From positions 9,672,001-9,736,000 of the forward strand of contig NC_088802.1 of NCBI RefSeq assembly GCF_011386835.1: a stretch of DNA of 64,000 nucleotides, in the 5' to 3' direction. Shown here piece by piece: positions 268-60,272 of this stretch. Origin of the DNA: Chrysemys picta bellii. Its lineage: Eukaryota. The notes beneath the pieces are model-generated. The model saw nothing but the letters and a program-made list of their open reading frames with translations, ran no database searches and was not told the DNA's origin. The position numbers and the translations under genes were made by a program. How positions within the stretch are numbered: the first letter of the stretch is position 1; every line of letters begins with the position of its first letter.

Positions 268-3200
268 GATGTCAGAAGCACTTTGAGCAGGTAGGTGGCT
301 CCTTCTCACTCCCCCTTGTGCTTCCCGATGCTGAGAAGGGGCTCAGGTACCAGGTGAGGGACACAGGGCCGGCTCCAGGCACCAGCTTAACAAGCAGGTG
401 CTTGGGGCGGCCAAGGGAGAGGGGCGGCATGTGTGGCAATTCGGGGTGACAGGTCCCTCACTCCCTCTAGGAGTGAAGGACCTGACACTGAACTGCCGCC
501 GCCAATCGCGGCTTTTTTTTTGGCTTGGAGCAGAAATGCTGGAGCCAGCCCTGGAGGGACATGTCTCCTCAGGGCCCGACAGGGAGCGCGTGGGACGGTC
601 TTCCTGTGAAGCTTCTAATCTTCCCTCCATCCTCAACGTCCTGGGGCTGCTGCCATTTCCCCAGAGTCCAGACCGGCCCAGACCTTAGGGTCAGGTGACT
701 CTGAGAACTCAGCTCCAGTCCCAGCTGTTCTCCCTGGTGCCTGGGCTGGGCCATCAGCTGGTAACACCCTGGATCTCTCTCTCTCTAGATGTGAGATGGG
801 CACATTCCAGGCTCCAGCGCCTGCTTCTCCTGAACCGAAATGGAGACTCTGGTTGTTTTCTCAAAATTTCGCTTTCCTCCAGGATGCGCTGAGGAAGCTG
901 AAAGGTAACGGAGAGATGGAGAAGTTCAGGAGGCGCGAGTGTGTTTACACAGGGGCTGGTCTGATTCGGATTTCACTGACGCTGGTTTCGCATCATCCTA
1001 ATTCTAGTGACTCCAGTGGGGTTAGTCTTGATTAACACCGGGGGCAAATCAGCCCCAAGGTCTCTTTCTTATTGGGTGAGTGTGAAAGAGCTAAACCACC
1101 CTAAATGCATGTAGCCTTTTATTTGATTTACAGTGAATTTAGTAATGTGGGATTACACCGCTGTAGGTTCGGCTCTGGTGACTAGTGTCAAGCTTAACAG
1201 AGTGAAAGTCACCTCTGCTACGTGCTTCAGTTTTAGAGTCTCTAGGAACACGTAGTGACCAAGGGCAGTGACCACAAAGACATTCACAAGTACAAGGTCT
1301 AGTCTGATTTACAAGTTTTATTAAAGTTACCATTAAAGTTATGAGTACCCAGGCATCTAGAAATTCCATACAGACCTATGCACAAGTTACAAACAGAGTT
1401 AGACTCACATCCTCCTAGATAGTGTTAGGGTCTGATGGGTCTCTCATGGATCGATCATCAGTAGAGGGATGGTTCCTGCTGGAGTTTCCCAGAGGGAGCT
1501 CTCAATTTTCCTAATGCAGGCATCTTTTCCCGTAAGCTTAAGGCATCAGGTTATTCTACGGTCACATACTTATACACCTCTACCCCGATATAATGCGACC
1601 CGATAGAACACGAATTCGGATATAACGCGGTAAAGCAGTGCTCCGGGGGGGGCGGGGCTGCACACTCTGGTGGATCAAAGCAAGTTCGATATAACGCGGT
1701 TTCACCTATAACGTGGTAAGATTTTTTGGCTCCCGAGGACAGCGTGATATCGAGGTAGAGGTGTATCAGCATTCCTTAACTCTACGGCCTAGTATGGTTA
1801 AGCTAAAATCTACAGGCCTCAGCTGGTAGGCCTTGTGTTTCAGCCCTACTTACTTAGATAAGACATAATTATCCCTAATAACTACTAATCAATCTATTTT
1901 ATACTTCTATAATCCTACAATTTAACTCTAACATACAATGATTATATATAATATGTTAGTTATACCATCCCACAATAAAATGAACAATAAACTAAAATCA
2001 CTGATTACATGCTGTTTCTTAACTAGCCCATATAAAATTCCAAGTCACTAGAAAGATCTGTCTGTGGGTTTTCTGTGCCGTTTCTTCCTCTGTCCAGCCC
2101 CTCATTCCCCTCTTGTGACTAAGTCCATGATAGTCATCGACAAAATCTGATCTCCTCTCCGTGCTCTTCTTCCTTTAGTGAATCTGTTGCCTGAACCGAA
2201 ACCGGACAGAGGTAAATTTCTAAGGGGTCGTTGGGAGACTGGCATTATTGATGGGATTGTTTTCCTGATGTGAGGAGAACACGTTTGGTTTGGGACATCA
2301 GAAGCAGCAGGAATCAAACTAATTGCTGGAGTCAGGGCTACAAACAGGACCTTGCACTGCCAGAGCCTCTAGGAATCTCTGTCATTGGAGATTTTTAAGA
2401 GCAGGTTGGACAGACACCTGTCAGGGATAGTCTAGATAATGCTTGGTCCTGCCTTGAGTGCAGGGGACTGGAGTAGAAGACTTGTTGAGGTCCTTTCCAG
2501 TCCTACTGTTCTGTGATTCTATGCAATGCCCACTGCAGGGGGTTATTACTAGCTACTAGGGTATTGTCAAGTTAATCTCAAGTCTCATGACATTTGTGTA
2601 TTTTTTATCTTATTTTTTATTTTTTTAAGATCCAGCTCTTGGACTCAAGTGATTATGGGAAAATCTCATTTTCATTTACTATTAAAAAAAAAATTCTAGC
2701 CCTTGTGGCTGCAGAGAAACTCTCCCCCTCCTCCCCAAAATATGACCACTAGGCATCTTAAAGGTTGAGAAAAAAGGCGGAAGATAGCAAGAACCCCATG
2801 ATTATTTTAAAAGAAAATTCCATGGATTGGGGTTGGGCTAATTCATAATGTCTGAATTCTTGGGTTTGGTGATGCTTCCAGACAGGCAGGGCCCACCTTA
2901 CGACTGACTCGGTCACTGTTTAACAATCAGATTGGACGGGAAAGGAAATTGTATCTGTGATTTGAAGGACAGAAGTTGATCAGAGCAAAAAAATGGGTGA
3001 GGGGGGAAATGAAAAATAGGCTTGGAGAGGGGCTGTAACAAATTACTGTGAGTGTCCACAAGATGGCAGCAGAACCTAAGGCATGAGACACAGCCCTTGC
3101 TGTGCTATATGCTGAAGCAAACCTTGCCCCACAGCTGAGCTCCGCCTCTAACACTGATATTTTTAATTCTCTCTCTCTGGGCAGCTGAAGTGACTCTGGA

Positions 3201-3702
3201 TCCAGACACGGCAAATCCCTGGCTCACCGTGTCCGCGGATGGCAAAAGTGTGCACTGGGGAGTCGCCCGGCAGGATCTGCCCGACCATCCCGAGAGATTT
3301 GACCCTGCTCCCTGCGTGCTGGCCTCTGAGGGCTTTGCCTCTGGGAGGCATTGCTGGGAGGTGGAAGTTGAAGAAGGGGCAGTCTGGGTCGTGGGAGTAG
3401 CCCTGGAACCTGTTAAGAGGAAAGGAGCGAGCACGTTTACACCAGAGCAGAGGATCTGGGCCGTGCGGAAATACTGGGAACAGCATTGGGCGCTCACCTG
3501 CCCTGAAACTCCTTTGTATCTACATGGGGTCCCTAGGAGGATCCGGATTTATGTGGACTATGAAGGGGGATTGGTGGCGTTTTATGATGCTGGCAACAAG
3601 GCCCCGATCTTCACTTTCCCACCAGCCCCTTTTGGTGGGGAGAAAATCTGCCCTTTCTTTGAGCTGCTGAGTACAGGCTCCCAGATCAAACTGTGCCCCT
3701 GA
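268..3702 (+). CDS. TRIM-family (B30.2/PRY-SPRY) gene 1, 3' four coding exons; 5' exons lie outside the window
   Basis: AG/GT-bounded exons 268-290 (23 nt, DVRSTLS), 789-904 (116 nt, RCEMGTFQ...DALRKLK), 2179-2211 (33 nt) and 3185-3702 (AEVTLDPDTANPWL...GRHCWEVEV...FF). They join into one open frame. Exon sizes and phases match the complete TRIM gene at 18.9-36.6 kb. Confidence 0.9.
364..553. mobile_element. Non-autonomous hAT-type DNA transposon (MITE)
   Basis: TIRs CAGGGCCGGCTCCAG / CTGGAGCCAGCCCTG, with a perfect 8-bp TSD GAGGGACA at 356-363 and 554-561. Confidence 0.85.
1573..1765. mobile_element. Tc1/mariner (Tigger/pogo-like) MITE
   Basis: TIRs TACACCTCTACC / GGTAGAGGTGTA with TA ends and internal inverted repeats. 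Confidence 0.6.
2372..2523 (+). mobile_element. CR1 LINE 3' fragment
   Basis: Typical CR1 3' tail (ggagatttttaagagcaggttggac...ccagtcctactgttctgtgattctatg), repeated many times in the window. Confidence 0.75.
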
Positions 3703-6214: not shown

Positions 6215-6655
6215 AATAGAATCATAGAATATCAGGGTTGGAAGGGACCTCAGGAGGTCATCTAGTCCAACCCCCTGCTCAAAGCAGGACCAACACCAAC
6301 TAAATCATCCCAGCCAGGGCTTTGTCAAGCCTGACTTTAAAAGCCTCCAAGGAAGGAGATTCCACCACCTCCCTAGGTAACCCATTCTAGTGCTTCACCA
6401 TCCTCCTAGTGAAAAAGTTTCTCCTAATATCCAGCCTAAAACTCCTGCACTGCAACTTGAGACCATTACTCCTTGTTCTGCCATCTGGTACCACTAAGAA
6501 CAGTCTAGATTCATTCTCTTTGGAACCCCCTTTCAGGTATTTGAAAGCAGCTATCAAATCCCCCCTCATTCTTCTCTTCTGCAGACTAAATAATCCCAGT
6601 TCCCTCAGCCTCTCCTCATAAGTCATGTGCTCCAGCCCCCCAGTCATTTTTGTTG
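6215..6655 (-). mobile_element. CR1 LINE 3' fragment (ORF2 C-terminus plus tail)
   Basis: ORF 6387-6647 reads [31 protein letters not shown]...[10 protein letters not shown], the CR1 ORF2 C-terminus. The agaatcatagaat tail is at 6215-6230. Confidence 0.85.
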
Positions 6656-7493: not shown

Positions 7494-7653
7494 TCACTTA
7501 AAGCAGATATATACAGTAACAACCTTAGCGCCTTCGGACCTCATACAAGTAAATAAAGTGAGAATCTTTATAACGCTGCTGCTGATCACCATTTTGCTTT
7601 CTAATCAGCATTAAGCTGTTCCAAAGCTTTCTTAGTCCTCTACAACTACACAC
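7494..7653 (-). pseudogene. Histone H2B pseudogene with an internal deletion of the histone fold
   Basis: The minus strand reads RYKDSHFIYLYEV (cf. [13 protein letters not shown]), directly fused to EGAKVVTVYICFK* (cf. [13 protein letters not shown]). The start appears as GTG at 7653. A degenerate stem-loop (aaaggtctctttacaagctac) lies near 7420-7440. Confidence 0.7.
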
Positions 7654-7699
7654 CTCTACCAGACTCCGTCTCTTTCTGAGCATACAAGAAGTCATAGTT

Positions 7700-7890
7700 C
7701 CTCTTTATATTGCCTATAGTCGGACCTGAGTGAAAACCTAGATAGCCTGCTCCTCCCCCCCCTCCCCTCGGCTAGCACTGACCCCAACCTCCTTCAAGCC
7801 AACATGGAACAATCCCCCTTTCCAACGGCGATATGCAAATTAAGGATTCCAACATTCCACTTTTCATTGGTTCCCTTGGGAAACCAATCA
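7700..7890 (-). promoter_or_regulatory. Promoter of the pseudo-H2B: TATA-like, H4-box-like, octamer and CCAAT elements
   Basis: atataaagaggaact (shared with the intact H2B promoter at 52516-52530), GGTTTTCACTCAGGTCCG at 7738-7721, ATGCAAAT at 7833-7840, ATTGG near 7866 and CCAAT near 7884. Confidence 0.6.
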
Positions 7891-8134
7891 AACACCGCGA
7901 ATGTTTGAAAGAAAACAGAAAACATGGAGAAGTGACTTTGCTCCCACTATTAATTAGAAGCTATTGCTTAGATTGTGAACTAGGAGTAAGGAAGGTGTAT
8001 TCGTACAGCACCTAGCACATTGGGACTTCATTCCTGAATGGGGTTTGTTTGATACTGCAATACAACTCAATATTTGTTAAAATAATCCTTTAATTTAACC
8101 CTTTATCCATTTATGAGATATTCATACTATGGAT

Positions 8135-8527
8135 GAGTGGCTCTCAACCTTTCCAGACTATTGCCCCCCTTTCAGGAGTCTAATTTGCCTTGTGTACCCC
8201 CAAGTTTCACCTCACTTAAAAACTACTTGCTCACAAAATCAGACATAAACATACAAACGTGTCACAGCCACTGGTACTGAAAAAGTGCTGACTTTCTCCT
8301 TTTTACCATATAATTATAAAATAAATCAATGGGAATATAAATATTGTGCCTGCATTTCAGTGTATAGCCTATAGAGCAGTATAAACAAGTCATTGTCTGT
8401 GTGAAATTTTAGTTTGTCCTGACTTCCCTAGTGCTTTTTCTGTAGCTGGTTATAAAACTAGGCAAATATCTAGATGAGTTGAGTACCCCCTGAAAGACCT
8501 CTGTGTACCCCTGGTTGCGCACCACTG
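8135..8527. mobile_element. hAT-like non-autonomous element (agtggctctcaacc family)
   Basis: Ends agtggctctcaacc / ggttgcgcaccactg. Closely similar copies are at about 27132-27535 and 36879-37280. Confidence 0.65.
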
Positions 8528-8624: not shown

Positions 8625-8858
8625 TACTAAAGCAGGGTGGGGAAAGGAAGTGCTGGCCCAGAAAAGGCCCTTTGGAGAGGCCCAAAGCGCTCAAGAAGCA
8701 GGAGAAGAAGCTTAAGAGGAAGAACAAAGCAGCGAAGAAAAAAAGCCAGGAAGAAACTAAAGGACCTTATAAAATCAGGAGCTACTTCTGCATCCCTTAT
8801 GCAGTGGGAAGCATCTAGAGAAAGTCCTCAAAGTCACACAACTATTGATTCACCCTAA
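8625..8858 (+). pseudogene. 5'-truncated H1-like relic (C-terminal tail only), paralog of the gene at 58763-59258
   Basis: LKKQEKKLKRKNKAAKKK, a frameshift in an A-run, then ARKKLKDL...SASLMQWEASRE...*. DNA matches the minus strand of 58760-58910 (cttctgcatcccttatgcagtgggaagcatct vs cttctgtatcctttatgcagtgggaaacatct). A histone stem-loop follows. Confidence 0.7.
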
Positions 8859-8872
8859 GGAAAGAATCGGAA

Positions 8873-8888
8873 GGCTCTTTTAAGAGCT
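8873..8888 (+). terminator. Histone mRNA 3' stem-loop (one G-U pair) of the H1 relic
   Basis: GGCTCTTTTAAGAGCT followed by ACCCC. Confidence 0.75.
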
Positions 8889-9301
8889 ACCCCATAACGT
8901 TCTCCAGATGAGCGTTAGCACAGATGGCCCCAGTTTTGTTTGATTTCGTTGCATGTGTGTGGAGCCAAAATCCTGGTTGTGAGATGCGAACCCTGCGGTG
9001 AATGGGAAGAAGGAAGGCAAACAGGGGCTGTAGGAACTCGTGTTTCAGAAAGCATTGCATTGTTTACCAGCACTAAAAACCTGTTTTAACACCAGCATTG
9101 GGGTAATCTCGATAAAGTCCCCGGGCTTTATAGCGCTGTCGGCTTTCCCGAACTGCGTATCATAAACTACATTGCTCAACGCTGCTAGTACTTGAATGAA
9201 TGGGGCTTTCTTTGCAACGCAAGTATGTTTCCCTGATTACTGGGGGTTGTCACTTCAACCCTTCCTTACGACACCCGGCACCCAAGCGTTCGCACACAGA
9301 A

Positions 9302-9344
9302 TCCGCTCTTTTGATGAACGCTGGGGGTGGTTCTGAAAAGAACC
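9302..9344 (-). terminator. Histone 3' stem-loop plus HDE (U7 site) of H1-like gene A
   Basis: Minus strand GGTTCTTTTCAGAACC-ACCC at 9344-9329, with purine-rich AAAAGAGC about 17 nt downstream. Confidence 0.9.
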
Positions 9345-9379
9345 GTTTTGGTTTTGTTTTTCGCTCCTGGCCTGAGCCG

Positions 9380-9916
9380 TCACTCCAGAAGGAAGGTGCC
9401 CTTAATAATATCTTCTAAGATTTGCTTCCTGCGCGTTGCCACCGTCCCCCTGATTTTGCCCGGGCTCCCGCTGACCCTCTTGGGCCGTGCAGCAGCCGGT
9501 TTGATTTCCCCGCTGGGGTCATTTGGCCCTGGGGCAGCTGTTCCTGTCTTCGCCGAGCTCTGGCGCCTCTTGGCCGCGGCTGTTTCCCTCGTTTTTGCTT
9601 TGGCGGCGCCGCCTCCCCGCTGGAGCCTGAAAGAGCCCGAGGCGCCGCTGCCGCTGACCCGACGCAGGGCCCCTTGGCTCAGGAGATAACGGAGCACAGC
9701 CTTGATGCGGCCCTTGTTCTTCCGCACGTCGTATCCCTCGCCCTCCAGCGTCTTCTTGATGGCGGCAAGAGAGACGCCTCTGCCGGCAGCGGGGACAGCA
9801 GCAGCCCGGAGAATGACCTGGCTGAGAGTCGGTTTCCTCCTTCTCTTGCGCCGGGGATTCTCCCGAGCCGCGCGGGAGGCCGCAAAAGCCGCGGGGAGAG
9901 AAACTGAACCGGGCAT
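9380..9916 (-). CDS. Divergent, arginine-rich linker histone H1-like protein A (178 aa)
   Basis: Winged-helix motif VSLAAIKKTLEGEGYDVRKNKGRIK...SGSGASGSFRL, intronless, with stem-loop and HDE. ATG 9916 was chosen because the ORF-track ATG at 10099 lies upstream of the H1 promoter elements. Confidence 0.9.
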   Translation of the reverse strand: MPGSVSLPAAFAASRAARENPRRKRRRKPTLSQVILRAAAVPAAGRGVSLAAIKKTLEGEGYDVRKNKGRIKAVLRYLLSQGALRRVSGSGASGSFRLQRGGGAAKAKTRETAAAKRRQSSAKTGTAAPGPNDPSGEIKPAAARPKRVSGSPGKIRGTVATRRKQILEDIIKGTFLLE

Positions 9917-10007
9917 GTCCCTGCGACCCAATCCCAGCTGCTGCCACCCAGACCCGCACGTGGGGCCGCCGCCCTGACACTGAGCCCGGCGGCCGCCACT
10001 CGAGGCC

Positions 10008-10087
10008 AGATAGAGAGCAGAGCCCGACGCAACCGAATCAATCCCCCGCTTTACTCCTGCTCCAGCGCCTCCCCCCAGCCTGTGTTT
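10008..10087 (-). promoter_or_regulatory. H1-type proximal promoter of gene A
   Basis: AC box AAACACA (10087-10081), motif TTGATTCGGTTGCGTC (10041-10026), and the TATA position degenerate (ctgctcTCTATCT vs ctgctcTATATAA in gene E). Confidence 0.75.
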
Positions 10088-11498
10088 CTTCCGCCCCACT
10101 CATGTTGCCCCCCAAAAAGCACCAGCCCCGATTTGCACAATCATTTCGCCCTCCCCGCTCCAGGGCACTGAGCTAGGTCCCCCGCTGGCGTTGTCCGAAA
10201 TATTCATGAGTTTTTGTCTGGGATAGGTCACAAAACTAGGCTGTGGCCGCCCATTTGACTCCTCAGCTCAGGAGAGAATTCGTGTTTATGGCTAAATTTA
10301 ACCCACATTCCCGCAGCTGCGGCCTCTGGATTTCACTGGGACAGGCTGGGGGTGTGAGGCAGAATAAAAGAGCAAAGCAATTCGTCTGCTTCTCGGGTTT
10401 TGTTGTCATCTAACTCGTTCTTAAAGAAACCTCAGAAACACACCCAAACACTTGCAAATACAGAGGGAATAACACTCCTTTCTTCCTATTGGACAAAAAA
10501 GAATCTCGCTTCCTATTGGCTCTCATTCTTTACCAATCAGGGCAGGGGTCTTCACATTTTTTTCCCTACAGGATTAGGATTGCAAGGGTCTGTTTCAGAT
10601 TGGGTTTGTTGGTTGTTTCTATTGGTGGAAGAGCAGTTTGAGGGTCTGTCAAGAGTTATTTTCGGTGCTTACTTCGGAAGCTGATTTTCCTGTGTATTGT
10701 GTCTTATCATTTACAGTTTAATAACAACCCCATGAACTCGACCCTTACACATCCCTTCTAAACTCGTTTGAAAGAAATAACTAGTGCCAAATGGAGTGAA
10801 AGGAGAGGTTTCTCTATGGCATTTGAAAGATGGCTATAATGGCTCCAGGAATCAAAGGGACTTATTCTCCTTCTGGCAAAGCTTCCCCAGATTGTAAATA
10901 CTTCCGAACATTTTTTTAAAGGCAGGTCTGGTATTTGAAAATAGGATTCTGCGGTAGTAAAGTGGAGTTTGTTTTCCTTCTTCCTGGAGTAGTGTTAGGC
11001 CTGGATCCTGTTCCACACAAGTTAATTAGAGCTTCACCCTTGACTCACATGGGAGAAGGGTCAAGCTCTTGAGGCCCCAGTTGAAGGAGGAGGAAAAGTC
11101 TAGGGAGTGGAGAAAAGAAAGGAGAAACCTATGCAAAATCTGTCCCTATACGTTATTTAATCCTAATTTCTGGCCAGTTTATAATAATTCTGCTTCAATA
11201 GATTGGGAGTCTTTTTCTACGGTATATTTTCCCTTTCACGCTTATTTTTTCTCTCTAACATAATGGGACACACACAAAAGATTTACAATATTCCTGTCAC
11301 TGATTCTTAGATCAGAATGAAATGTGTTCATTTTTTCTAATCGTTTCTTTTGAGGGAAGAGGAAAAGGTTCATCTCCCTTGCCTGTTTCCTGCCGTGGCT
11401 GCATTTGCAGGTGGTCGCTTTAAAAAAAGACTTGTTTTTCCTCCAACCAGAGTCTTGGACTCCTTGTCGTCCTATCAGAGCCTGCCTTTCCTTGTGAG

Positions 11499-24900: not shown

Positions 24901-27900
24901 CCCTGCGCTCATCCAGCATCCCGCATCAAGATCCATCCTCAAAACTGAGTAAGTCAAACATTATTAGCCTGTCATTTTGGTTCTGCAGAGTGGCATACAA
25001 CACTGATATGAGCTGTGCACAGAATCCCAGCAGGGCTGGGTTTAAATACATATACAGAGAGTGTCTTAATTTAAGGACACATCCTCAAAGCCCTCTAAAA
25101 TTCACAGACAGACTCAGATCGGCTACACCAGTTGAAGTGTGGGCTGGGAAGTGTGAGTTGGCAGTAAGAAGGGGCCACAATACCTGCTCAAGGTGCTTCT
25201 GATGACCTGGAAAGAAAGAGAAAGAATAGAATCATAGAATCGTAGGACTGGAAGGCACCTCGAGAGGTCATCTAGTCCAGTCCCCAGCACTTCTGGCAGG
25301 ACTAAGTATTATCTAGACCATCCCTGACAGGTGTTTGTCCAACCTGCTTTTACAAATCTCCAATGAAGGAGATTCCACAACCTCCCTAGGCAATTTATTC
25401 CAGTGCTTAACCACCCTGACAATTAGGAAGTTTTTCTAATGTCCAACCTAAACCGCCCTTGCTGCAATTTAAGCCCATTGCTTCTTGGCCTATCCTTAGA
25501 GGTTAGAGAACAATTTTTCTCCCTCCTCCTTGTACAAGGGAGCTCAATCCATACCCCACATTTCCCTGTCCTGTCCCCCACACATTTCCCTGTCCTATTG
25601 CCCCCACCCTGCCTTGTCTACACTAAAGGGCCTTTGCAGGTATAACTATGCCAGCAGAGCCCCCTAGTGGACACAGTGCGAAAGCTCACAGAACGAATTA
25701 TAGCTACTTGATCTCCTTGAATGACATAAACTAGGCTGGTCTCATAGGCGCCAACTTCTCCTGGTGCTGGTGGGAGCTTGCACCCCCCTGCTCCGCCCTG
25801 ACTTCTCCCCTGCCCCACCCCCTCCCGCCCCTGCCTTGCCTCCATTCCAACCCCTTCCCCAAAGTCCCTGCCCCAAGTCTGCCTCCTCCCTGCCCCTATT
25901 GGACCCCTTCCCCAAATCCACGCCCCAGCCCCACCTCTTCCCTGCCTCCTCCCCTAAGCGCACCGCATTCCCACTCCTTCCCCCTCCCTCCCACAGCTTG
26001 TTACGCCGCAAAACAGCTGTTTTGTGGCGGCAAGCCTGGGAGGAGAAGCGGGGACATGGCGCGCTCAGGGGAGGAGGCAGAGGTGAGCTGGGGATGGGGG
26101 GCAGGGAGCTTGGCTGCCGGTGGGTGCAGAGCACCCACCAATTTTTCCCCATGGGTGCTCCAGCCCCAGAGCACCCACAGAGCCGGCACCTATGGCTGGT
26201 CTGTCAGAATAGTTGCATCAACACTGGGGATTTAGTAGGCATAACTACGTCGGCTGGTGGCATGATTTTTTTCACACCCCTGACCAGCGTAGCTATGCCG
26301 GCAAAACTTTGTAGCGCAGACTACGCCTTTGTCCCCTCTTTTCTTGCATCTCTGTTTAGCTAATCCCCTCCTAACAAAATCCCAGTCACTTTTTGGAGAA
26401 ACAAAAATTCATGGCACTAACATAACATTTGCAAATCTGTTCACGCTGCACGGATGTTCTCTCTCTTTTCCCTCCCTTTGTCTGTCTTGGCTATTTAGAT
26501 TGGAAGCTCTTCAGGGCAGAGCCTATTATTTCAAGTTCGTACAGCTCCCAGCACAACAGGGCACGAATCTCGGTTGGCTCTTAGACACCACTGTGGTGAA
26601 ATTACAATATCAGATAAGAATGGCCATACTGGCTCAGGCCAATGGTCCATCTAGCCCAGTATCCTCTCTCCCACAGTGGCCAGTACCACAATTTCAGGGG
26701 AAGTGTACAGAACAAGGTAATTGGAGTGACCCACCGCTGTCTTCCCCTCCTGGCTTCTGGCAGTCAGAAGTGGGAAACCAAATGAAGAGATTAAAAAAAA
26801 AGGGGGGGGAGTCATGTGATCCAAGAGACAGGCAAGGAAAACGAGTTTCGCTGGCTACTCAAAAAAACCCAGTGCAATTTCAGCAGGAAGCGAATGTTCA
26901 AAGCATAGCACAGCAGGACAGGAAGGGAATAGAACCTGGTATAACTGTACATGGGATAGTGAATCCCATTCCAGGGGCCACAGTAGCAAAGAGATGCAGA
27001 CCAACTGGAAGATGTAAGAAGGGCAACAAATTGATTGAGGGGCTGGATTGACTGATCTATGAGGAAAGAGTAAGACAGCTTCCAGAGATTCATCATTTTT
27101 AGGTCTGGCGGGACCACTAGCTCATCTAACCCAGTGGCACTTAACCTTTCCCTACCACCAATCAGGAGTCTGATTTGTCTTGCCTACCCCCAAGTTTCAC
27201 CTCATTTAAAAATGACACTTACAAAATCAGACATAAAAATACAGACGTGTCCCAGCCACTATTACTGAAAAATGGCTGACTTTCTCATTATTACCATATA
27301 ATTAGAAAATAAATCAACTGGAATATAAATATTGTGCTTACATTTCAGTATATAGTGTGTGGAGCAGTATAAACAAATCATCGTCTGTATGAAATTTTAG
27401 TTTGTGCTGAGTTCACTAGTGCTTTTTATGTAGCCTGTTGTAAAACTAGGCAAATATCTAGATGAGTTGATGTCCTCCCTGGGAGACCTCTGTGTACCCC
27501 CAGTGGGACACGGACCCCTGGTTGAGAACCACTGGCCTAGGCTGACCTCCCATGTAACACAGGCCAGCGAATTTCACCCAGGTACAGCTGTGTTGAGCCT
27601 GATAAAATAGCCCATCTTCTAGGAAGGCATCCTGTCTTGACCTGAATACACCAATAGGTGGAGAAGTCCACCTCTTCCCTGGGTAGTTTCTTCAGAGCCC
27701 TCACTGAAAAAAATGGGCCTCTTATTTCTAAATTTGAATTTGTCTGGCTTTAACTTTCAGCCCTTGGTTCTTGTTATGCCTTTCTCTCCTAGATTGAACA
27801 GCCTAGTATTTCTCCCCGGGAAGGTATTTGTAAATCATAATCAAGTCACCTCTCAATCCTCTTTTTGATAAGCTACACAGATTGAGCTCTTCAAACCTCT

Positions 27901-36563: not shown

Positions 36564-38752
36564 TGTACCCAGCAGCAGGGCAAAGGTGCACACAGAGTTG
36601 AGCTGCACTTATCTACTTCCTGAAGCTCAGGGATGGGTGGAGCTCTCATCAGCAATCAGCCCCCTTCCTGAAGTTGCAAGTTGTTTTGGCAGTTGTTGCA
36701 GCAGCAGCCACCCGGCCTGCTCAAGAGAACGGAGCCTACACGTCCGGTGCGTTTCCCAACTTCTGGCCAGCCTACACGTTTTGCTCGTGGTGGGACTGAT
36801 GGGTTCACGCCAGTTTGCACACACCTTGATATATGCTAGCACAGTGACACCCCAGGCGTGTTTTGGTTTGCCCCAGTGCAGGGGCTCTCAACCTTTTCAG
36901 ACGACTGGAGTCCGATTTGTCTTGGCTTCCCCCACGTTTCCCCTCACTCAAAACCGACTTCCTTACACAAGCAGACATAACAATACAAAAGTGCCACAGC
37001 ACGCTAGTCCTGAAAAAGGGCTGACTTTCTCATTGTTCTATCATGATAAAATAAATCCATTGGAATATAAATATTGTATTTATATGTTCAGTGTACAGTC
37101 TATAGAGCAGTATAAACAAGTCACTGTCCGTTTGAAATTTTAGTTTGTCCTGACTTCACTAGTGCTTTTTATGCAGCCTGTTGTAAAACTAGGCAAATAT
37201 CTAGATGAGATGATGTACCCCCTGGAAGATCTCCGTGTACCCCCGGCAGGACACATATCCCCGGTTGAGAACCCCTGCCCTAGTGTGGACTGCAAAGCAA
37301 CCTCACAGGCAAATATTTATGTCCTGGGAGTAATAGTACTGGTGTTGGTCGTGGGGCTTGAGGAGCGTCTGTCTAGATTATAATATTGCCAACCCCAAAG
37401 GTTGAAAAATCATGACTCAAACCCCCCCATCCTCCTGCAAAAATGTTGAGATTGGCCCCAAACCCATGAGATTAAAAAACTAAACAAAACAAAACAAAAC
37501 AAAAAAACGGTGGGTTTTTTTTTTCTTTGGTCTGTCTGATTTTTGAACTCCTTCCAGTATGTGTCAACTAATGTTGCCCCCTCTCCCAAATGTGTGACTT
37601 TGGTCTCTGCTGCAGGCAGTCCCCTCCCCATCTGAATATCCCCTGCCCAGCAGTTAACTCTCCCCCCCAATACCCAAATCAATCCTGTCCCCCCTCCCAG
37701 ATCTGTCTGTCACCCAACCCCCGCATCTGTCCTTCCCTGTTGTCTGCCCCCATCAGCTCCTACCTGAATTCTGCCCTCAGATCTGCTGTCACCCAGCTCC
37801 CTCCATCAGTTCTGACTCCACATCTGGCCCTCATACCCTATATCCCCTTTGCAGCTCCCGGGGTTCTGAGCCAGATGAGCAGGTGAAAGAAGTGGATTCT
37901 CAGATATTCTGATCGCCATATTTGGGCCGGGAAGGAATTTTCCTCCAGGGCAGACTGGCAGAGGCCCTGGGGGTTTTTTCGCCTTCCTCTGCAACGTGGG
38001 ACACGGGTCATTTGCTGGAAGATTCTCTGCACCTTGAAGTCTTTAAACCATGATTTGAGGAGTTCAATGGCTCAGACACAGGTTTGATACAGGAGTGGGT
38101 GGGTGAGATTCTGTGACCTGCGTTGTTCAGGAGGTCAGACTAGACAATCAATAATGGTCCCCTCTGACCTTAAAGTCTATGACTCTATGATTCATAAGTG
38201 GATTCTCAGCCCTGGTGGAGCAGCTGTAGTGGGGTCCCCGTTCCCAGGCTGCGTGTTGCAGGGATGGAAAGGGGGCGGGGGCAAAGCAGAGAAGCCATCC
38301 CATTGTTCATAGTAGGGGAAAGGAAGAAAAATGAGGGAATGGATTTGCCTTGAGCTGCTGGGTAGAGCTGGGCAAAAAATCAATTTTTGGTTCAGTGGCC
38401 AACCCAGAAAAGAAAAGAAAAGAAAAGAAAAGAAATTGTTGAGGGTTAACCTGAACTGACTGACTGCTTGGTTTTTTCCTCAGCAAATATTCCAAAGCCA
38501 TCTCATTTTAAATGACAATCTTCTTGAACTAAAAAAAAAAAAAAAAAATTCCAACCTGTGTTTGGCAGGCAAGGAGCTGGGAAAGGATTGACAGGCAATG
38601 AAGTGAATAATGGGACTAAACGTTTATTGCAAAATCAGGGATATTTCTGCTAGTTACAGAAAAGCAGGAAGGACAAATAGGACACACTCCGAACAGAAAT
38701 CCCCTCATTAACAGGCCTGGGACTGGGCTTTGTTTTATTCTGTGCATCTCAC

Positions 38753-46389: not shown

Positions 46390-47550
46390 ACCACAACTAC
46401 TGATAAGTGGTCTCCTGCCAAGCTCTAAGATACAACCACATTTGCTTCGATCCCTCTTGCTTTGATCCCTCAGACAGAAACAAACACCTACAGGATCTCT
46501 ATCAAGCATTCTTAAAACTACAGTACCCACCTGGTGAAGTGAGGAAACAGATTGACAGAGCCAGAAGTGTACCCAGAAGTCACCTACTACAGGACAGGCC
46601 CAACAAAGAAAGTAACAGAACACCACTAGCTGTCACCTACAGCCCCCAACTAAAACTTCTCCAGCGCATCATCAAGGATCTACAACCTATCCTGAAGGAT
46701 GATCCCTCACTCTCACAGACCTTGGGAGACAGGCCAGTCTTCGCTTACAGACAGCCCCCCAACCTGAAGCAAATACTCACCAGCAACTACACACCACACA
46801 ACAAAAACACCAACCCAGGAACCAAACCCTGCAACAAACCCCGGTGCCAACTCTGTCCACATATCTATTCAAGGGACACCATCATAGGACCTAACCACAT
46901 CAGCCACACCATCAGGGGCTCGTTCACCTGCAAATATACCAATGTGATATATGCCATCATGTGCCAGCAATACCCCTCTGCCATGTACATTGGCCAAACT
47001 GGACAGTCTCTACGCAAAAGAATAAATGGACACAAATCTGACAGGAATCATAACATTCAAAAACAAGTAGGAGAACACTTCAATCTCTCTGGTCACTCAA
47101 TAACGGACCTAAAAGTGGCAATTCTTCAACAAAAAAACTTCAAAAACAGACTCGAACATGAAGTTGCAGAACTGGAATTAATTTGCAAATTAGATACCAT
47201 CAGATTAGGCCTGAATAAAGACTGGGAGTGGTTGAATCATTACAAAACCTCAACCTAATTTACCCACTACTAATTTCTCCCTATTGTTACTCACACCTTC
47301 TTGTCCACTGTCTGTAAAGGGCCACTTTCATTACCACTTCAAAAATTATTTTTCCTCCCTTGGTATCCTGCTGTTAATTGATTTCTCTCGTTAGACTGAC
47401 CTCACACTTGGTAAGGCAACTCCCATCCTTTCATGTATTTATACCTGCTCCTGTATTTTCCACGTCATGCATCTGATGAATTGGGTTCTAGCCCACGAAA
47501 GCTTATGCTCAAATAAATTTGTTAGTCTCTAAGGTGCCCCAAGGACTCCT
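46390..47550 (+). mobile_element. Penelope-like retroelement, 5'-truncated (end of RT region plus GIY-YIG endonuclease)
   Basis: ORF 46407-47258 contains VIYAIMCQQ...MYIGQTGQSLRKRINGH...HFN (GIY-YIG). The 3' end reads cccacgaaagcttatgctcaaataaatttgttagtctctaaggtgcc. Confidence 0.85.
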
Positions 47551-56641: not shown

Positions 56642-57507
56642 CACTGAATGTAGTATCAAGAACTAAGGCTGTGTCTGTTTTTGCCTTCCTATCCCCTTTA
56701 TAGGAACAGGCATAGCAAATTCTCCCTGACACAGATAGGAAGAAACTTCTGATAATACATTAGCCCTACTCTTCATTCTAGCTAGCTATTGTTAGCTACG
56801 GGGATTTCCTTTAAATTTTACCCACATTTGGTTTCCTTCATTGATCTATATGATCTTCATGATAGAAAACACTGCAAAGGGAGCACTGATTGCAGGTAAT
56901 GCATATTCCACCGGTTTACAATGCATATAATTCCATAGTGTGTGCATACAACAAAATAAGAATTTGTCTCAGTATGTGGCCAGCTAAGAAGTATACAGCT
57001 CCACTGGGTATCTATGTATATGGGATATGTTCATTTGCACATTTCTGAAAATTTGTTCCTTAAATGAGAAAAGTTCAGATACATAAACGGGAGATTTTCA
57101 TGGCCGTTAAACTCAGAGTTGGGAGTCTTCATTAGAATTAGGCTATTCCAGTTAGGCCTAATTGTTATTTGTGACTTTGAAGCTCTTTCTTTAAAAGTCT
57201 ACAAGGACAAAAGGATGCAGAGTTACAGGAGAATTAAGAGCACAGTCATGAAGGATCTCACTGCTGCAGGGCTTTGTGTAATTTTTTTGGCAGGTGAATG
57301 TATTGCTTAATGTTTGTAATCCTCAGCCAAACACATTTGTCATGTAGTTACATAGCCCAGTTTTGTGACCTATCCCAGACAGCAACTCATAAATATTTCG
57401 GACAACGCCAGCGGGGGAACTAGCTCAGTGCCCTGGAGCGGGGAGGGCGAAAGGATTGTGCAAATCGGGGCTGGTGCTTTTGGGGGGCAACATGAGTGGG
57501 ACGGAAG

Positions 57508-57590
57508 AAACACAGGCTGGGGGGAGGCGCAGGGGCAGGAGTAAAGCGGGGGATTGATTCGGTTGCGTCGGGCTCTGCTCTCTATCTGGC
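57508..57590 (+). promoter_or_regulatory. H1-type promoter of gene B
   Basis: AAACACA at 57508-57514, TTGATTCGGTTGCGTC at 57554-57569, and a degenerate TATA position as in gene A. Confidence 0.75.
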
Positions 57591-57678
57591 CTCGAGCGGC
57601 GGCCGCCGGGCTCAGTGTCAGGGCGGCGGCCCCACGTGCGGGTCTGGGTGGCAGCAGCTGGGATTGGGTCGCAGGGAC

Positions 57679-58215
57679 ATGCCCGGTTCGCTTCGTCTCC
57701 CCGCGGCTTTTGCGGCCTCCCGCGCGGCTCGGGAGAATCCCCGGCGCAAGAGAAGGAGGAAACCGACTCTCAGCCAGGTCATTCTCCGGGCTGCTGCTGT
57801 CCCCGCCGCCGGCAGAGGCGTCTCTCTTGCCGCCATCAAGAAGACGCTGGAGGGCGAGGGATACGACGTGCGGAAGAACAAGGGCCGCATCAAGGCTGTG
57901 CTCCGTTATCTCCTGAGCCAAGGGGCCCTGCGTCGGGTCAGCGGCAGCGGCGCCTCGGGCTCTTTCAGGCTCCAGCGGGGAGGCGGCGCCGCCAAAGCAG
58001 AAACGAGGGAAACAGCCGCGGCCAAGAGGCGCCAGAGCTCGGCGAAGACAGGAACAGCTGCCCCAGGGCCAAATGACCCCAGCGGGGAAATCAAACCGGC
58101 TGCTGCACGGCCCAAGAGGGTCAGCAGGAGCCCGGGCAAAATCAGGGGGACGGTGGCAACGCGCAGGAAGCAAATCTTAGAAGATATTATTAAGGGCACC
58201 TTCCTTCTGGAGTGA
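57679..58215 (+). CDS. Arginine-rich H1-like protein B (178 aa), near-identical inverted copy of gene A
   Basis: Differs from gene A at 4 residues (VS/LR near the start, K/E, G/R), or 7 nt differences in 537 by hand count. Stem-loop and HDE are present. Confidence 0.9.
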   Translation: MPGSLRLPAAFAASRAARENPRRKRRRKPTLSQVILRAAAVPAAGRGVSLAAIKKTLEGEGYDVRKNKGRIKAVLRYLLSQGALRRVSGSGASGSFRLQRGGGAAKAETRETAAAKRRQSSAKTGTAAPGPNDPSGEIKPAAARPKRVSRSPGKIRGTVATRRKQILEDIIKGTFLLE

Positions 58216-58250
58216 CGGCTCAGGCCAGGAGCGAAAAACAAAACCAAAAC

Positions 58251-58290
58251 GGTTCTTTTCAGAACCACCCCCAGCGTTCATCAAAAGAGC
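58251..58290 (+). terminator. Histone stem-loop plus HDE of gene B
   Basis: GGTTCTTTTCAGAACC-ACCCC at 58251-58266 and AAAAGAGC at 58283-58290. Confidence 0.9.
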
Positions 58291-58695
58291 GAATGTCTTT
58301 GCTCCTTGGTGCTATATTTTGTAACGCGGCTTTTTTTAGAGATTAGGGAGGGTTGTGTGTGTTGTATGTATTCCTAGAATAGAAAGCAAACGGCAGCACT
58401 ACCATTGATGAATGCATTTTATGATAGGCAGGTCAGGGAAAACCAACAACACCAGGACAAGGCAGGGAACCTTCAAGATTAGTTAGATCCTGCCATTGAA
58501 TTAACTGACTTAAAATAAAGGGGGGTTGACCTTATTTTGTTGTTTTTTTGATTTGGTAAAGAAGGCAACTGACCCACGTTTATATGGTTTTCACCTTCCC
58601 TAACGCCTAGGATCTGGTCCTAGACAAATACAGAAAAAATGTTTTTTTAAAGGTATATTTGTGCTAACGTTCTTTTAGGGAAAGTTTTTGGGGGT

Positions 58696-58711
58696 GGCTC
58701 TTAAAAGAGCC
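58696..58711 (-). terminator. Histone stem-loop of pseudo-H1 D
   Basis: Minus strand GGCTCTTTTAAGAGCC-ACCCC. Confidence 0.85.
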
Positions 58712-58762
58712 TTTGGATTGATTGATTTTTTTCGGTAGAATGAGTCAGTAGAATTATGCCTT

Positions 58763-59258
58763 TTAGGGCTTCCCCTCGAGAGATGTTTCCCACTGCATAA
58801 AGGATACAGAAGCGACAGTTTCTCCAGTTCCCTCTTCCTGATCCACAAGAGCCTCTGCTTTCTTCTTGGCTTTTTTCTTCGCTGCTTTTTTGTTCCTCTT
58901 GCCCCCTGCTTCTTTGGCGATTTGTCCTTCTTCACCAGCGGAGGGGTTAGCTTCGCTTCTGCGATGAGCTTGTAGGAGCCCGGGACCTTAAGCAAGACAT
59001 TCGTGGTGACCAGCTTCCCAAGCTCCGCTTTGATACGGGCTTTGTTCTTCTTAACATCGATCCCCGCCGCCGCCAGCTCTTTCCTGATGACGCCCAGGGA
59101 GACCTCCCCGGAGTGCTGGGAGAAATCCACGGTCTGGAGAATGAAATGGGCAAAACCTTCGCGGTCTTTTCGAGTTATCGGTACCGCCTTCCTCTTCTTC
59201 CGCTTCGTTCTCTTGCTGGCTGGCGCCTGGGAAGGGGCAGCGGCTGATCTGTGTTCAT
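58763..59258 (-). pseudogene. Frameshifted H1-like gene D (same subfamily as C)
   Basis: ATG AAC ACA (MNT, as in gene C) at 59258 is out of frame with the globular domain (VSLGVIRKELAAAGIDVKKNKARIK). A second shift near 58.9 kb is needed to reach KRNKKAAKKKAKKK...ASVSFMQWETSLEGKP*. There is no in-frame ATG before the upstream TAG at 59310. Confidence 0.8.
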
Positions 59259-59982: not shown

Positions 59983-60272
59983 GTGTGTGTTTGTACGATG
60001 AAGAAATGTAGACAGATGCTGATTGGTGATGTCTCAAAGAAGGGTGCGGAAAAAGAGTAGGAAAGCGTTTTATTCCGCATACCTGTAAGAGATGCTGAAG
60101 TAGGTTCACATGGGCACTCGGGCATGTTTTCTAAGGTCCTGAGCATCTTGAATTCTGCCGCAAATTATCTGTCTGAGCGCATTGCCACAGAATTTATCGT
60201 GCCTGTCCGTATACAGCAAGCTCTGGGAAGTCAGCTACAGGAAAGTCGAGGCTGCTTGGATCTTGGTCTGAA
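59983..60272 (+). pseudogene. Histone H2B pseudogene of the same variant lineage
   Basis: KKCRQMLIGDVSKK (cf. [14 protein letters not shown]), KSRKAFYSAYL*EMLK*VH, SGMFSKVLSILNSAANYLSERIATE and SCLSVYSK...SYRKVEAA, with stops and frameshifts. The start appears as GTG. Promoter relics ccttaattacatatc and tcaggtc lie upstream. Confidence 0.8.

What the first reader, a model, noticed from the sequence alone, without database searches (positions are those of the whole stretch)
9302..10240. Old inverted duplication with recent gene conversion confined to one H1 transcription unit
Segment 9302-10240 (minus) is about 98% identical to 57355-58292 (plus), roughly 17 differences by hand count. High identity starts about 150 nt upstream of the AC box and stops right after the HDE (aaaagagcg). 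Beyond it, homology continues but is heavily decayed: the spacer (tttatgatacgcagttcgggaaagcc vs ttttatgataggcaggtcagggaaaacc; tgtgctaacgctc vs tgtgctaacgttc), then a convergent H1 (8.7 kb vs 58.9 kb), then a pseudo-H2B (7.6 kb vs 60.1 kb) in mirror order. Inference: an ancient inverted block duplication in which only the functional gene is being homogenised between copies about 47 kb apart. Such inverted repeats could also invert the intervening TRIM genes.
Basis: partly seen in the sequence, partly recalled or inferred. Interest (0 to 1): 0.78.

Follow-up and report, generated by a model that had tools for sequence, protein, structure and literature searches.

The report
Two turtle H1 genes overwriting each other
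Two mirror-image copies of an unusual turtle linker-histone gene, 47 kb apart, come from a very old duplication, but repeated copying between them has kept just the gene, its promoter and its 3' signals about 98% identical; this is a clear new example of a well-known process.

Summary
Observation confirmed. Window 9301-10245 (-) matches 57351-58294 (+) at 97.9% over 945 nt: 19 substitutions and 1 indel.

The tract is one complete H1-like gene unit, from 326 nt upstream of the ATG (H1 box included) to just past the stem-loop and HDE.

- **Flanks.** Downstream, homology continues collinearly but is decayed: spacer, a dead convergent H1-like gene, then an H2B promoter and coding relic in mirror order. 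Upstream there is none.
- **Age.** Mis-modelled database proteins carry locus-specific flank exons. They show that Chelydra has both an A-locus and a B-locus ortholog, so the duplication predates crown Durocryptodira.
- **Concerted evolution.** The coding sequences still group by species: 6 sites against 0, and the AU test rejects grouping by locus (p 0.005). dS between A and B is 0.014, so selection alone cannot explain the identity.
- **Possible polymorphism.** The older painted-turtle assembly has a B allele with Malaclemys-like B-type residues at codons 105-111. The window's B is A-like there and shares the unique V48 with A. One short conversion may therefore be recent enough to be polymorphic.

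The kind is known; mammalian H2A.B/H2A.L variants behave the same way. This scan also noted conversion signatures elsewhere in this genome (an H4-H3 palindrome, a TCAP pair).

No cross-species DNA or reads were examined, and the inversion idea is untested.

The parts
9302..10245 (-). Copy A of the homogenised tract: promoter, H1-like CDS and 3' processing signals
   Evidence: 98.0% identical to copy B. GC 62% and CpG o/e 0.80, against 40-46% GC in the flanks.
57351..58293 (+). Copy B of the homogenised tract
9380..9916 (-). H1-like gene A: 178 codons plus stop
   Evidence: Pfam Linker_histone, E 1.3e-12. The protein is identical to database protein P0019. Intact orthologs occur in at least 15 turtle species.
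57679..58215 (+). H1-like gene B: 178 codons plus stop
   Evidence: Pfam. Identical to P0022. It differs from A at 6 codons, 2 synonymous and 4 non-synonymous; dN 0.0129, dS 0.0141.
9304..9349 (-). Histone 3' stem-loop of A (B: 58246-58291 +)
   Evidence: Rfam RF00032, 30.1 bits, E 1e-5, below the gathering score of 34.
10081..10090 (-). H1 (AC) box AAGAAACACA of A (B: 57505-57514 +)
   Evidence: 3 exact matches in the window, 0.25 expected.
8926..9301 (-). A-side spacer with residual homology to B 58294-58656
   Evidence: 9179-9137 vs 58405-58448, 79.5% identical, E 2e-4; global alignment z = 5.8.
58294..58405 (+). B-side spacer just past the tract, conserved in the Chelydra B-locus model P0015
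   Evidence: the P0015 tail matches 58219-58405 in three frames (E 1e-10 to 1e-7). At locus A the match stops at 9323, inside the tract.
10305..10409 (-). A-specific upstream flank used as 'exon 1' in gene models of the old C. picta assembly (P0011) and of Chelydra (P0013)
   Evidence: P0011 matches 33/35 residues (E 2e-20); Chelydra P0013 matches 26/35 (E 1e-13). There is no counterpart upstream of B.
8714..8925 (+). A-side relic of the convergent H1-like gene: tail plus a weak stem-loop at 8873-8896
   Evidence: collinear with B 58657-58900, K2P 0.255. Rfam 18.5 bits, E 0.25. No linker-histone coding signal is left.
58657..59172 (-). B-side convergent H1-like pseudogene (conv-B) with a good stem-loop at 58672-58716
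   Evidence: Rfam 35.8 bits. The start MNTDQ is in a different frame from the globular domain, and the ORF reads through the stem-loop. Its intact paralog is D at 54764-55345.
8136..8514 (.). Interspersed-repeat copy in the A arm only, lying where the 5' half of the convergent gene should be
   Evidence: 81-85% identical to 27132-27540 and 36879-37283. K2P between copies is 0.14-0.19, 7 to 9 times the A-B tract divergence.
7838..7892 (-). H2B-type promoter relic in the A arm, with CCAAT boxes and the octamer ATTTGCAT (B arm: 59709-59764 +, octamer decayed)
   Evidence: 78.6% identical over 56 nt, E 3e-7. Offsets from the tract end are 1409 (A) and 1415 (B).
60047..60268 (+). H2B coding relic in the B arm (A arm: fragments at 7497-7695 -)
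   Evidence: tblastn with the window's intact H2B (52584-52946) gives E 1e-3 and 4e-3, with stops and frameshifts. The A side shows only the C-terminal 14 residues (7538-7497, E 4, not significant alone). Pfam found nothing in the ORF pieces.
57820..58011 (+). Candidate youngest conversion patch, codons 48-111 of B, bounded by differences at 57807 and 58126
   Evidence: The window's A and B alone share V48. The window's B has A-type A105/T109/E111. The old-assembly B-locus model P0014 and Malaclemys copy 2 have P105/R109/G111.

Best explanation
**What it is.** An ancient inverted duplication copied a block of at least 2.8 kb holding three histone genes: an H1-like gene, a convergent second H1-like gene, and an H2B. 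This happened before the common ancestor of pond turtles and snapping turtles.

**What happened since.** In both arms the convergent H1-like gene and the H2B died and decayed by substitutions, indels and a repeat insertion. The remaining H1-like gene stayed intact in both arms.

**How the two copies stay alike.** Non-allelic (interlocus) gene conversion keeps homogenising them. A break in one copy is repaired from the other copy on the same chromosome in short patches of a few hundred nt, usually without crossover.

**Why the tract is confined.** Conversion needs near-identical sequence to start and to resolve. It is therefore confined to the island that is still alike: 326 nt of promoter, the 178-codon CDS and 81 nt of 3' signals. 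It stops where the arms have diverged too far. The tract is a mosaic of patches of different ages. The promoter part is oldest (K 0.035), the coding part is younger (K 0.013), and one patch (codons 48-111) is possibly young enough to be polymorphic in painted turtles.

**Shown:** the repeat, its limits, the decayed collinear flanks, the age of the duplication, and grouping by species.

**Inferred:** the repair mechanism, the patch sizes, and the direction of transfer.
For: **Sharp limits.** The 98% tract ends abruptly, with collinear decayed homology and matched offsets on the downstream side.

**Mirror-order relics.** Stem-loops, an H2B promoter with octamer, and an H2B coding relic lie in mirror order.

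**Silent and non-coding sites are homogenised too.** dS is 0.014, dN 0.013 and the 5' non-coding K 0.035. This compares with K 0.255 in the best-kept flank island, 0.14-0.19 between copies of the repeat inserted in arm A, and dS 0.76 against paralog C.

**Positional orthology with Chelydra.**
- Chelydra P0013 carries the A-type upstream flank.
- Chelydra P0015 carries the B-type downstream spacer.
- Both lie on one 182-kb contig.

**Grouping by species.**
- Window A and B against Chelydra A and B: 6 sites group by species, 0 by locus.
- In the ML tree, Chelydra A and B are sisters (97/91).
- The AU test rejects grouping by locus (delta lnL 25.6, p 0.0047).
- Species-only residues are shared by both copies in Chrysemys (V48), Gopherus flavomarginatus (L48, R80) and Lepidochelys (P99).

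**Complementary mosaics.**
- Malaclemys copy 2 keeps B-type codons 105-111 but has A-type ends (VS5-6, G150).
- The window's B keeps B-type ends (LR, R150) but has an A-type middle.

**Assembly.** The reference assembly is HiFi-based with 14-kb reads (PMC13077969).
Against: All cross-species evidence is therefore at protein level, and much of it rests on mis-modelled proteins.

**Locus assignment is incomplete.** Locus could be assigned by flank only for Chrysemys, Chelydra and, for A alone, Chelonoidis. In Emys, Malaclemys, Lepidochelys and Gopherus flavomarginatus the positions and orientation of the two copies are unknown.

**Assembly origin is inferred.** That the window comes from the HiFi assembly follows from exact protein matches and the low N content. 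It is not stated anywhere.

**No sign of constraint between A and B.** dN/dS between A and B is about 0.9 on only 6 changed codons, so these few differences show no constraint. Function rests on intact ORFs in many species.
Confidence: 0.85

Rival explanations
1. One single copy-and-paste event a few tens of millions of years ago overwrote one copy with the other. This could be one long conversion or a replacement duplication of about 945 nt. The copies have simply diverged since, with no ongoing or repeated exchange.
For: Two sequences from one genome cannot separate one event from many. The overall 2.0% divergence is close to the genome-wide Chrysemys-Trachemys distance of 1.8%. The longest perfect run, 192 nt, is not unusual for 19 differences in 944 nt.
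Against: **Uneven divergence.** It is uneven along the tract: 12 differences in 326 nt of 5' sequence against 7 in 618 nt (Fisher p 0.013).

**Several lineages.** Both copies share species-only residues in several separate lineages, including Chelydra, where the loci are assigned by flank. Exchange must therefore have happened independently many times.

**Opposite mosaics.** The window's B and Malaclemys copy 2 are mosaics in opposite senses.

**V48.** It is shared by the window's A and B but is absent from the old-assembly models of both loci.
Confidence: 0.08
2. Purifying selection alone has kept promoter, coding sequence and 3' signals alike since the old duplication, while the neutral flanks decayed. 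No sequence exchange took place.
For: The tract coincides exactly with a functional unit, and histone genes are classically explained by birth-and-death evolution with strong purifying selection (review PMC13525598).
Against: **Silent sites.** They are as alike as replacement sites: dS 0.014, dN 0.013. The 326 nt of 5' non-coding sequence are 96.6% identical.

**The protein is not strongly conserved.** Orthologs are only 83-95% identical across turtles, while the paralogs are 98% identical.

**Shared lineage-specific changes.** The paralogs share them, and grouping by locus is rejected.
Confidence: 0.02
3. Assembly artefact: one real gene was placed twice, or two more divergent copies were smoothed towards each other by the assembler.
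For: No reads could be examined. An N gap lies between the copies at 49929-50071. Models from the older assembly differ from the window at both loci by 4-5 residues.
Against: **Distinct loci.** Each copy has unique flanks on both sides, and there are 20 fixed differences between them.

**Independent assemblies.** A-type and B-type flanks are each found next to an H1-like core in an independent Chelydra assembly and in the older painted-turtle assembly. Two distinct copies per chromosome are annotated in Emys, Malaclemys, Lepidochelys (two assemblies) and Gopherus flavomarginatus.

**Read length.** The current reference was built from 14-kb HiFi reads, far longer than the 0.94-kb tract.
Confidence: 0.03

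Closest known systems
Concerted evolution by gene conversion of the mammalian short histone H2A variants H2A.B and H2A.L (Molaro et al. 2018, PMC5880237; read)
   Same: These are histone variant genes in dispersed duplicates. [quoted passage not shown] Pseudogenised copies are exempt from homogenisation. Conversion acts over tens to hundreds of kb.
   Different: Those are core-histone variants on the mammalian X, and their identity blocks are large (10-50 kb). Here the gene is a turtle-restricted linker-histone variant with a histone stem-loop 3' end. The identity island is only 0.94 kb, cut tightly around one gene, inside arms that have otherwise decayed.
Classical two-copy gene pairs homogenised only over the gene region, such as inverted hsp70 pairs in Drosophila and globin pairs (review of ectopic conversion in Drosophila, PMC3924832; theory in PMC3924837; KRTAP1 coding-versus-flank contrast, 10.1101/282418). 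All three were listed; only their abstracts were read.
   Same: An old duplication with low divergence confined to a gene-sized island, diverged flanks, and short conversion tracts.
   Different: No new mechanism is implied here. The difference lies only in the gene family, the host lineage, and the age (older than crown Durocryptodira) over which the exchange has persisted.
Sex-chromosome palindromes kept over 99.9% identical by arm-to-arm conversion, with rare inversions (PMC3723533 and PMC8981503, listed; abstracts only)
   Same: Inverted orientation on one chromosome, intrachromosomal conversion, and a possibility of inversion by crossover.
   Different: Palindrome arms are many kb long and almost identical throughout, with short spacers. 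Here only 0.94 kb is alike, at 98%, and the spacer is 47 kb. GC bias could not be tested here.
Birth-and-death evolution under purifying selection, the standard model for vertebrate histone families including H1 (as summarised in PMC13525598)
   Same: The family in this window shows birth and death. It has five H1-like loci, of which two are dead, plus dead H2B copies.
   Different: The A/B pair does not fit pure birth-and-death, because silent and non-coding sites are homogenised. The review states that concerted evolution lacks evidence in jumbled, non-tandem histone loci, and this pair is such a case.

Membership tests
Interlocus (non-allelic) gene conversion / concerted evolution of paralogs | Paralogs within a species are more alike than positional orthologs between species | tested here: met
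   Loci were assigned by flank sequence in Chrysemys and Chelydra. Six sites group by species and 0 by locus. Chelydra A and B are sisters (97/91), and the AU test rejects grouping by locus (p 0.0047). Protein level only.
Interlocus (non-allelic) gene conversion / concerted evolution of paralogs | Silent and non-coding positions are homogenised as well, so selection on the protein is not the cause | tested here: met
   dS 0.014 against dN 0.013. The 5' non-coding 325 nt are 96.6% identical and the 3' UTR is 98.8% identical.
Interlocus (non-allelic) gene conversion / concerted evolution of paralogs | The duplication is much older than the divergence of the tract, shown by diverged homologous flanks | tested here: met
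   Four collinear flank hits with matched offsets. Flank-island K2P is 0.24-0.26 against 0.020 in the tract. A- and B-type flanks are both present in Chelydra.
Interlocus (non-allelic) gene conversion / concerted evolution of paralogs | Discrete tracts detected statistically on nucleotide alignments of several species (GENECONV, GARD) | not testable with these tools
Only protein-level mosaics were seen.
Interlocus (non-allelic) gene conversion / concerted evolution of paralogs | Both copies and their junctions confirmed in raw long reads | not testable with these tools
Linker histone H1 gene of the replication-dependent type | Winged-helix globular domain (Pfam Linker_histone) | tested here: met
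   PF00538, E 1.3e-12, 48 bits against a cut-off of 22.4, residues 29-99 of the 179-residue translations used in that call (28-98 in the 178-codon numbering used elsewhere in this report), in both copies.
Linker histone H1 gene of the replication-dependent type | 3' stem-loop and downstream element in place of a poly(A) signal | tested here: inconclusive
   Rfam Histone3 gives 30.1 bits, E 1e-5, but the gathering score is 34. The third stem pair is U-A rather than C-G. A purine-rich element follows.
Linker histone H1 gene of the replication-dependent type | H1-specific promoter box AAGAAACACA upstream of the start | tested here: met
   Exact match in both copies. The TATA position reads TATCTGG in both copies, which is not a consensus TATA box.
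Linker histone H1 gene of the replication-dependent type | Expression as RNA or protein | not tested
   No reads tool was available. Intact ORFs in at least 15 turtle species are the only support.
Large palindrome maintained by arm-to-arm conversion | Long arms (many kb) almost identical along their whole length, with a short spacer | tested here: not met
   The identity island is 0.94 kb at 98%. The rest of the roughly 2.8-kb arms has decayed, and the spacer is 47 kb.

The most novel reading that the evidence does not exclude
The exchange is still going on, and one event is polymorphic within western painted turtles. In the haplotype of this window, about 190-320 nt of copy B (codons 48-111) were overwritten from copy A. 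This carried the new A-allele residue V48 into B and erased the B-type residues P105/R109/G111. The older reference animal and Malaclemys still have those residues at the B locus. A then appears to be the habitual donor in three separate patches, in Chrysemys and Malaclemys. If so, the pair would be a natural system for measuring the rate, tract length and direction of non-allelic conversion in a very slowly evolving vertebrate. The same repeats could also carry a polymorphic 47-kb inversion of the TRIM segment.
Probability: 0.35. Interest if true: 0.5.

Novelty: new member of a known kind. Interest (0 to 1): 0.35.

Why it matters
This is a clean vertebrate case in which a linker-histone variant gene pair in a jumbled, non-tandem histone cluster evolves in concert. 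Such loci are usually explained by birth-and-death evolution with purifying selection.

- **A conversion island.** The homogenised region shrinks to exactly the functional gene, while the dead neighbours in the same duplicated arms drop out of the exchange.
- **Gene trees mislead.** Trees of these turtle H1-like genes will underestimate the age of the duplication.
- **Annotation errors.** Current gene models join unrelated exons here: D to A across 45 kb, and B to C.
- **Population use.** If the youngest patch is polymorphic, the locus could be genotyped with flank-anchored PCR to watch conversion, and perhaps inversion, in natural populations.

Tried and rejected
Depth, junction reads and expression are untested.

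**Searches that found nothing useful.**
- Pfam on ORF pieces of the supposed H2B relics and the A-side convergent relic found no histone fold. The H2B reading instead rests on tblastn with the window's own intact H2B and on the promoter motifs. The A-side coding relic is not significant on its own.
- A first flank-distance script used free end gaps and gave a degenerate spacer alignment. It was redone with penalised ends and shuffles.
- Three further look-ups in the scan's own findings gave nothing on more H1-like copies; one search returned only the TCAP pair cited above.

**Ideas considered and dropped.**
- *A third A/B-like or chimeric D/A gene elsewhere in the genome,* suggested by P0010, P0012 and P0014. 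Mapping their end exons to the window shows they are gene models joining D's first exon to A's core, and B's core to C's tail. No extra locus is needed, although one is not excluded.
- *RefSeq accession spacing as a proxy for gene order.* Considered, and not used as evidence.
- *GC-biased conversion as the cause of the arginine-rich tail.* GC3 of A and B (0.70-0.72) is not higher than that of the paralogs C (0.68) and D (0.80), so there is no support.
- *The 192-nt perfect run as statistical evidence for a young patch.* It is not unusual given 19 differences.
Full report
**1. The observation**

A self-comparison of the window finds one outstanding repeat. It is 9301-10245 against 58294-57351, inverted, 97.88% identical over 945 columns. 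The next best pairs are interspersed repeats at 81-94%.

Base-by-base alignment gives 19 substitutions (13 transitions, 6 transversions) and one single-base indel.

A global alignment of 5.5 kb around each copy shows the limits. Identity per 100 nt rises from about 45% to 95% at A 10245 / B 57351. It falls from 100% to about 36% at A 9302 / B 58293.

- the H1 box AAGAAACACA lies 155 nt inside the 5' edge;
- a histone stem-loop sits at 9304-9349 and 58246-58291 (Rfam 30.1 bits, E 1e-5, under the gathering score of 34);
- the purine-rich downstream element comes directly before the 3' edge.

The tract is a CpG island, with GC 62% and CpG o/e 0.80, in flanks of 40-46% GC.

**2. What the tract holds**

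Each copy has an intact 178-codon ORF with a Pfam linker-histone domain (E 1.3e-12). It has 24-26 arginines against 15-16 lysines.

A and B differ at six codons, two silent and four replacement. dN is 0.0129 and dS 0.0141.

Differences are denser in the 326 nt upstream of the ATG (12) than in the remaining 618 nt (7); Fisher p is 0.013. K2P is 0.035 for the 5' non-coding part, 0.013 for the CDS and 0.013 for the 3' UTR.

**3. The flanks**

*Upstream.* No homology is detectable: there are no BLAST hits in 4 kb, and the alignment score is 0.9 sd above shuffles.

*Downstream.* Four collinear, same-orientation matches lie at nearly equal distances from the tract end. The A/B offsets are 122/111, 376/363, 531/551 and 1409/1415, with E from 2e-4 to 6e-14. 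The 370-nt spacer as a whole scores 5.8 sd above shuffles.

The matches correspond to features in mirror order:
- **A second, convergent H1-like gene.** Its stem-loop faces that of A/B. On the B side it scores 35.8 bits at 58672-58716. On the A side there is a weak remnant at 8873-8896.
- **An H2B-type promoter.** In arm A it has two CCAAT boxes and a perfect octamer ATTTGCAT, followed by a TATA box. In arm B the octamer has decayed.
- **H2B coding remnants.** The intact H2B at 52584-52946 finds B 60047-60268 at E 1e-3, with stops and frameshifts. In arm A it finds only the last 14 residues.

Both neighbours are dead in both arms. Conv-B starts in one frame, continues in another and reads through its own stem-loop. 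Conv-A has lost its 5' half, where an interspersed repeat now lies at 8136-8514.

That repeat's copies differ from one another by K 0.14-0.19. The best-kept flank islands differ by K about 0.25. The tract differs by 0.020. The relative ages are therefore flanks, then repeat insertion, then much later the last homogenisation.

**4. Evidence from other turtles**

A word-based protein search found relatives only in turtles: 16 clusters, with the pleurodire Pelusios at 59% identity.

Cluster listings show two distinct copies on one chromosome in Emys, Malaclemys, Lepidochelys (in two assemblies) and Gopherus flavomarginatus. P0019 and P0022 are exactly the window's A and B.

Several database proteins are mis-modelled, however, and carry pieces of locus-specific flank:
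- **Chelydra P0013 and old painted-turtle P0011** begin with an 'exon' that maps to 10409-10305. This lies just upstream of A and has no counterpart at B. P0013 matches 26/35 residues (E 1e-13) and P0011 matches 33/35.
- **Chelydra P0015** reads past the stop codon into sequence that matches B's 3' spacer as far as 58405. One stretch of 16/19 identical residues crosses the tract end. At A the match stops inside the tract.
- **Chelonoidis P0023** ends with exons that map to 6196-6036, downstream of A.
- **P0014 (old painted-turtle assembly)** starts with 39/40 residues from 55427-55546, upstream of B, and ends with the tail of C at 62 kb.

Chelydra therefore has an A-locus and a B-locus gene on one 182-kb contig. 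The two arms were already different before Americhelydia and Testudinoidea separated. That is crown Durocryptodira (topology from 10.1101/2021.10.14.464421). From memory, and not checked here, this is a Cretaceous split.

**5.

With loci assigned by flank, 6 sites group the window's A with B and Chelydra's A with B. None groups A with A and B with B.

In an ML tree of the shared 112 residues:
- Chelydra A and B are sisters (97/91);
- the two G. flavomarginatus copies are sisters (97/92);
- the AU test rejects the by-locus arrangement (delta lnL 25.6, p 0.0047).

The full-length tree shows no deep A/B split either. Copies fall into Cheloniidae, Gopherus, Emydinae and Deirochelyinae.

Residues found in one species only are shared by both of its copies: V48 in Chrysemys, L48 and R80 in G. 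flavomarginatus, and P99 in Lepidochelys.

Together with dS of 0.014, this rules out selection alone and establishes concerted evolution.

**6. Patchiness and a possibly segregating event**

The older assembly came from Washington animals. The current reference is a HiFi assembly of a Minnesota animal. The two are 99.4% identical overall, and C. picta is 98.2% identical to T. scripta (PMC13077969).

| Sequence | Locus | Residues at the informative codons |
|---|---|---|
| Old assembly, P0011 | A | A48, S59, T73, A105, T109, E111, G150 |
| Old assembly, P0014 | B | V43, A48, A73, P105, R109, G111, R150 |
| Malaclemys copy 1 | A-type | A105, T109, E111 |
| Malaclemys copy 2 | B-type | P105, R109, G111 |

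At codons 105, 109 and 111 the old-assembly alleles and Malaclemys group by locus: 3 sites to 0.

In the window, B is A-like at all three sites, and A and B alone share V48. B keeps its own ends (LR at codons 5-6, R150). Malaclemys copy 2 is the reverse mosaic, with A-type ends (VS, G150) and a B-type middle.

The simplest reading is a set of short, independent A-to-B patches. One of them, 190-320 nt long, lies between the differences at B 57807 and 58126. It would be younger than the split between the two painted-turtle haplotypes.

The flank pieces of P0014 support an event confined to the gene. Its first exon is 39/40 identical to the window and its C tail has one change in about 70 residues, while its B core has five changes in 126.

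Caveats:
- this rests on gene models from a 454/Illumina assembly, in which paralogs could have been mixed;
- a further copy outside the window is not excluded.

I give it about one chance in three.

**7. Timing**

The average A-B divergence (2.0%) is about the genome-wide Chrysemys-Trachemys distance (1.8%). Averaged over the tract, the 'recent' conversion is therefore of the order of the age of the deirochelyine genera. It is older for the promoter part and younger for the coding part. The CpG-rich composition may inflate these values.

**8. Mechanism and comparison with known cases**

The pattern is what non-allelic gene conversion between dispersed paralogs produces. Short tracts depend on near-identity. 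The homogenised island therefore shrinks to the part that selection and earlier conversions have kept alike, and it ends where indels, a repeat insertion and substitutions have destroyed homology.

The closest precedent is the mammalian short H2A variants. Their copies group by species rather than by synteny, and pseudogene copies are exempt (PMC5880237). Gene-sized conversion islands with diverged flanks are described for many pairs (PMC3924832, PMC3924837 and 10.1101/282418).

A recent review notes that concerted evolution lacks evidence in jumbled histone loci (PMC13525598). This pair is a modest counter-example.

This scan has noted conversion signatures elsewhere in the same genome, in an H4-H3 palindrome and a TCAP pair. 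I did not check those.

The locus is not a palindrome in the sex-chromosome sense: only 0.94 kb is alike, and the spacer is 47 kb.

**9. What remains open**

Direct confirmation of both junctions, copy depth and expression is missing.
- The orientation of the two copies in other species is untested.
The longest perfect run, 192 nt, makes crossover conceivable but probably rare.
- The N run at 49929-50071 was left as it is.

**Verdict**

This is a well-documented new member of a known kind, with a possible population-level twist.

Noticed in passing
window 54764-55345 (-), 9380-9916 (-), 57679-58215 (+), 61969-62505 (+): Public gene models join unrelated genes here. P0010 (old C. picta) and P0012 (Gopherus evgoodei) splice the first part of H1-like D to the core of A across about 45 kb. 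P0014 splices an ORF antisense to D's 5' end (55427-55546) to the core of B and the tail of C. P0011 and Chelydra P0013 use a cryptic acceptor at codon 48 of A.
   Followed up: yes
window 58657-59172 (-): The convergent H1-like gene next to B keeps a stem-loop that passes the Rfam gathering score (35.8 bits). However, it has a frameshift between its start (MNTDQ) and the globular domain, and its ORF runs through the stem-loop. It is a young-looking pseudogene, or there is an indel error in the assembly.
   Followed up: partly
window 52584-52946 (+) with stem-loop 53002-53047; 54764-55345 (-) with stem-loop 54688-54734: An intact 121-residue H2B with an unusual N-terminus ([12 protein letters not shown]...) and an intact 192-residue H1-like gene D lie between the TRIM genes and copy B. 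D is the living paralog of the dead convergent genes, 75.7% identical in nucleotides over 152 nt.
   Followed up: partly
window 10020-10045 (-) and 57550-57575 (+): At the expected TATA position both A and B read TCTATCTGG. The in-frame translations suggest that paralog C has TCTATAAAG in the same motif context. A and B may be TATA-less or weakly expressed.
   Followed up: no
window 60681-60808: A palindromic element matches the MIR2084 model on both strands (61 and 56 bits, below the gathering score of 100). Related pieces lie at 16241-16424 and 47470-47560. It is most likely a hairpin-forming transposon, not a microRNA gene.
   Followed up: no
window 6219-6444 vs 48030-48256: A second inverted pair, 93.8% identical over 227 nt, lies just outside A and inside the A-B interval. 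The adjacent ORF (6387-6647) reads like the C-terminal end of a retrotransposon reverse transcriptase, so these are probably two copies of one interspersed repeat.
   Followed up: no
window 3190-3702 (+), 18943-19467 (-), 40823-41383 (-): Three PRY-SPRY exons (Pfam E 1e-19 to 1e-23) confirm the TRIM-type genes. One lies outside the A-B interval and two lie inside it.
   Followed up: partly
window 9383-9430 (-) and orthologs: The C-terminal motif RRKQILEDIIKGTFLLE is almost invariant across cryptodiran turtles, although the rest of the tail varies. This is unusual for an H1 tail, and another finding of this scan covers it.
   Followed up: no
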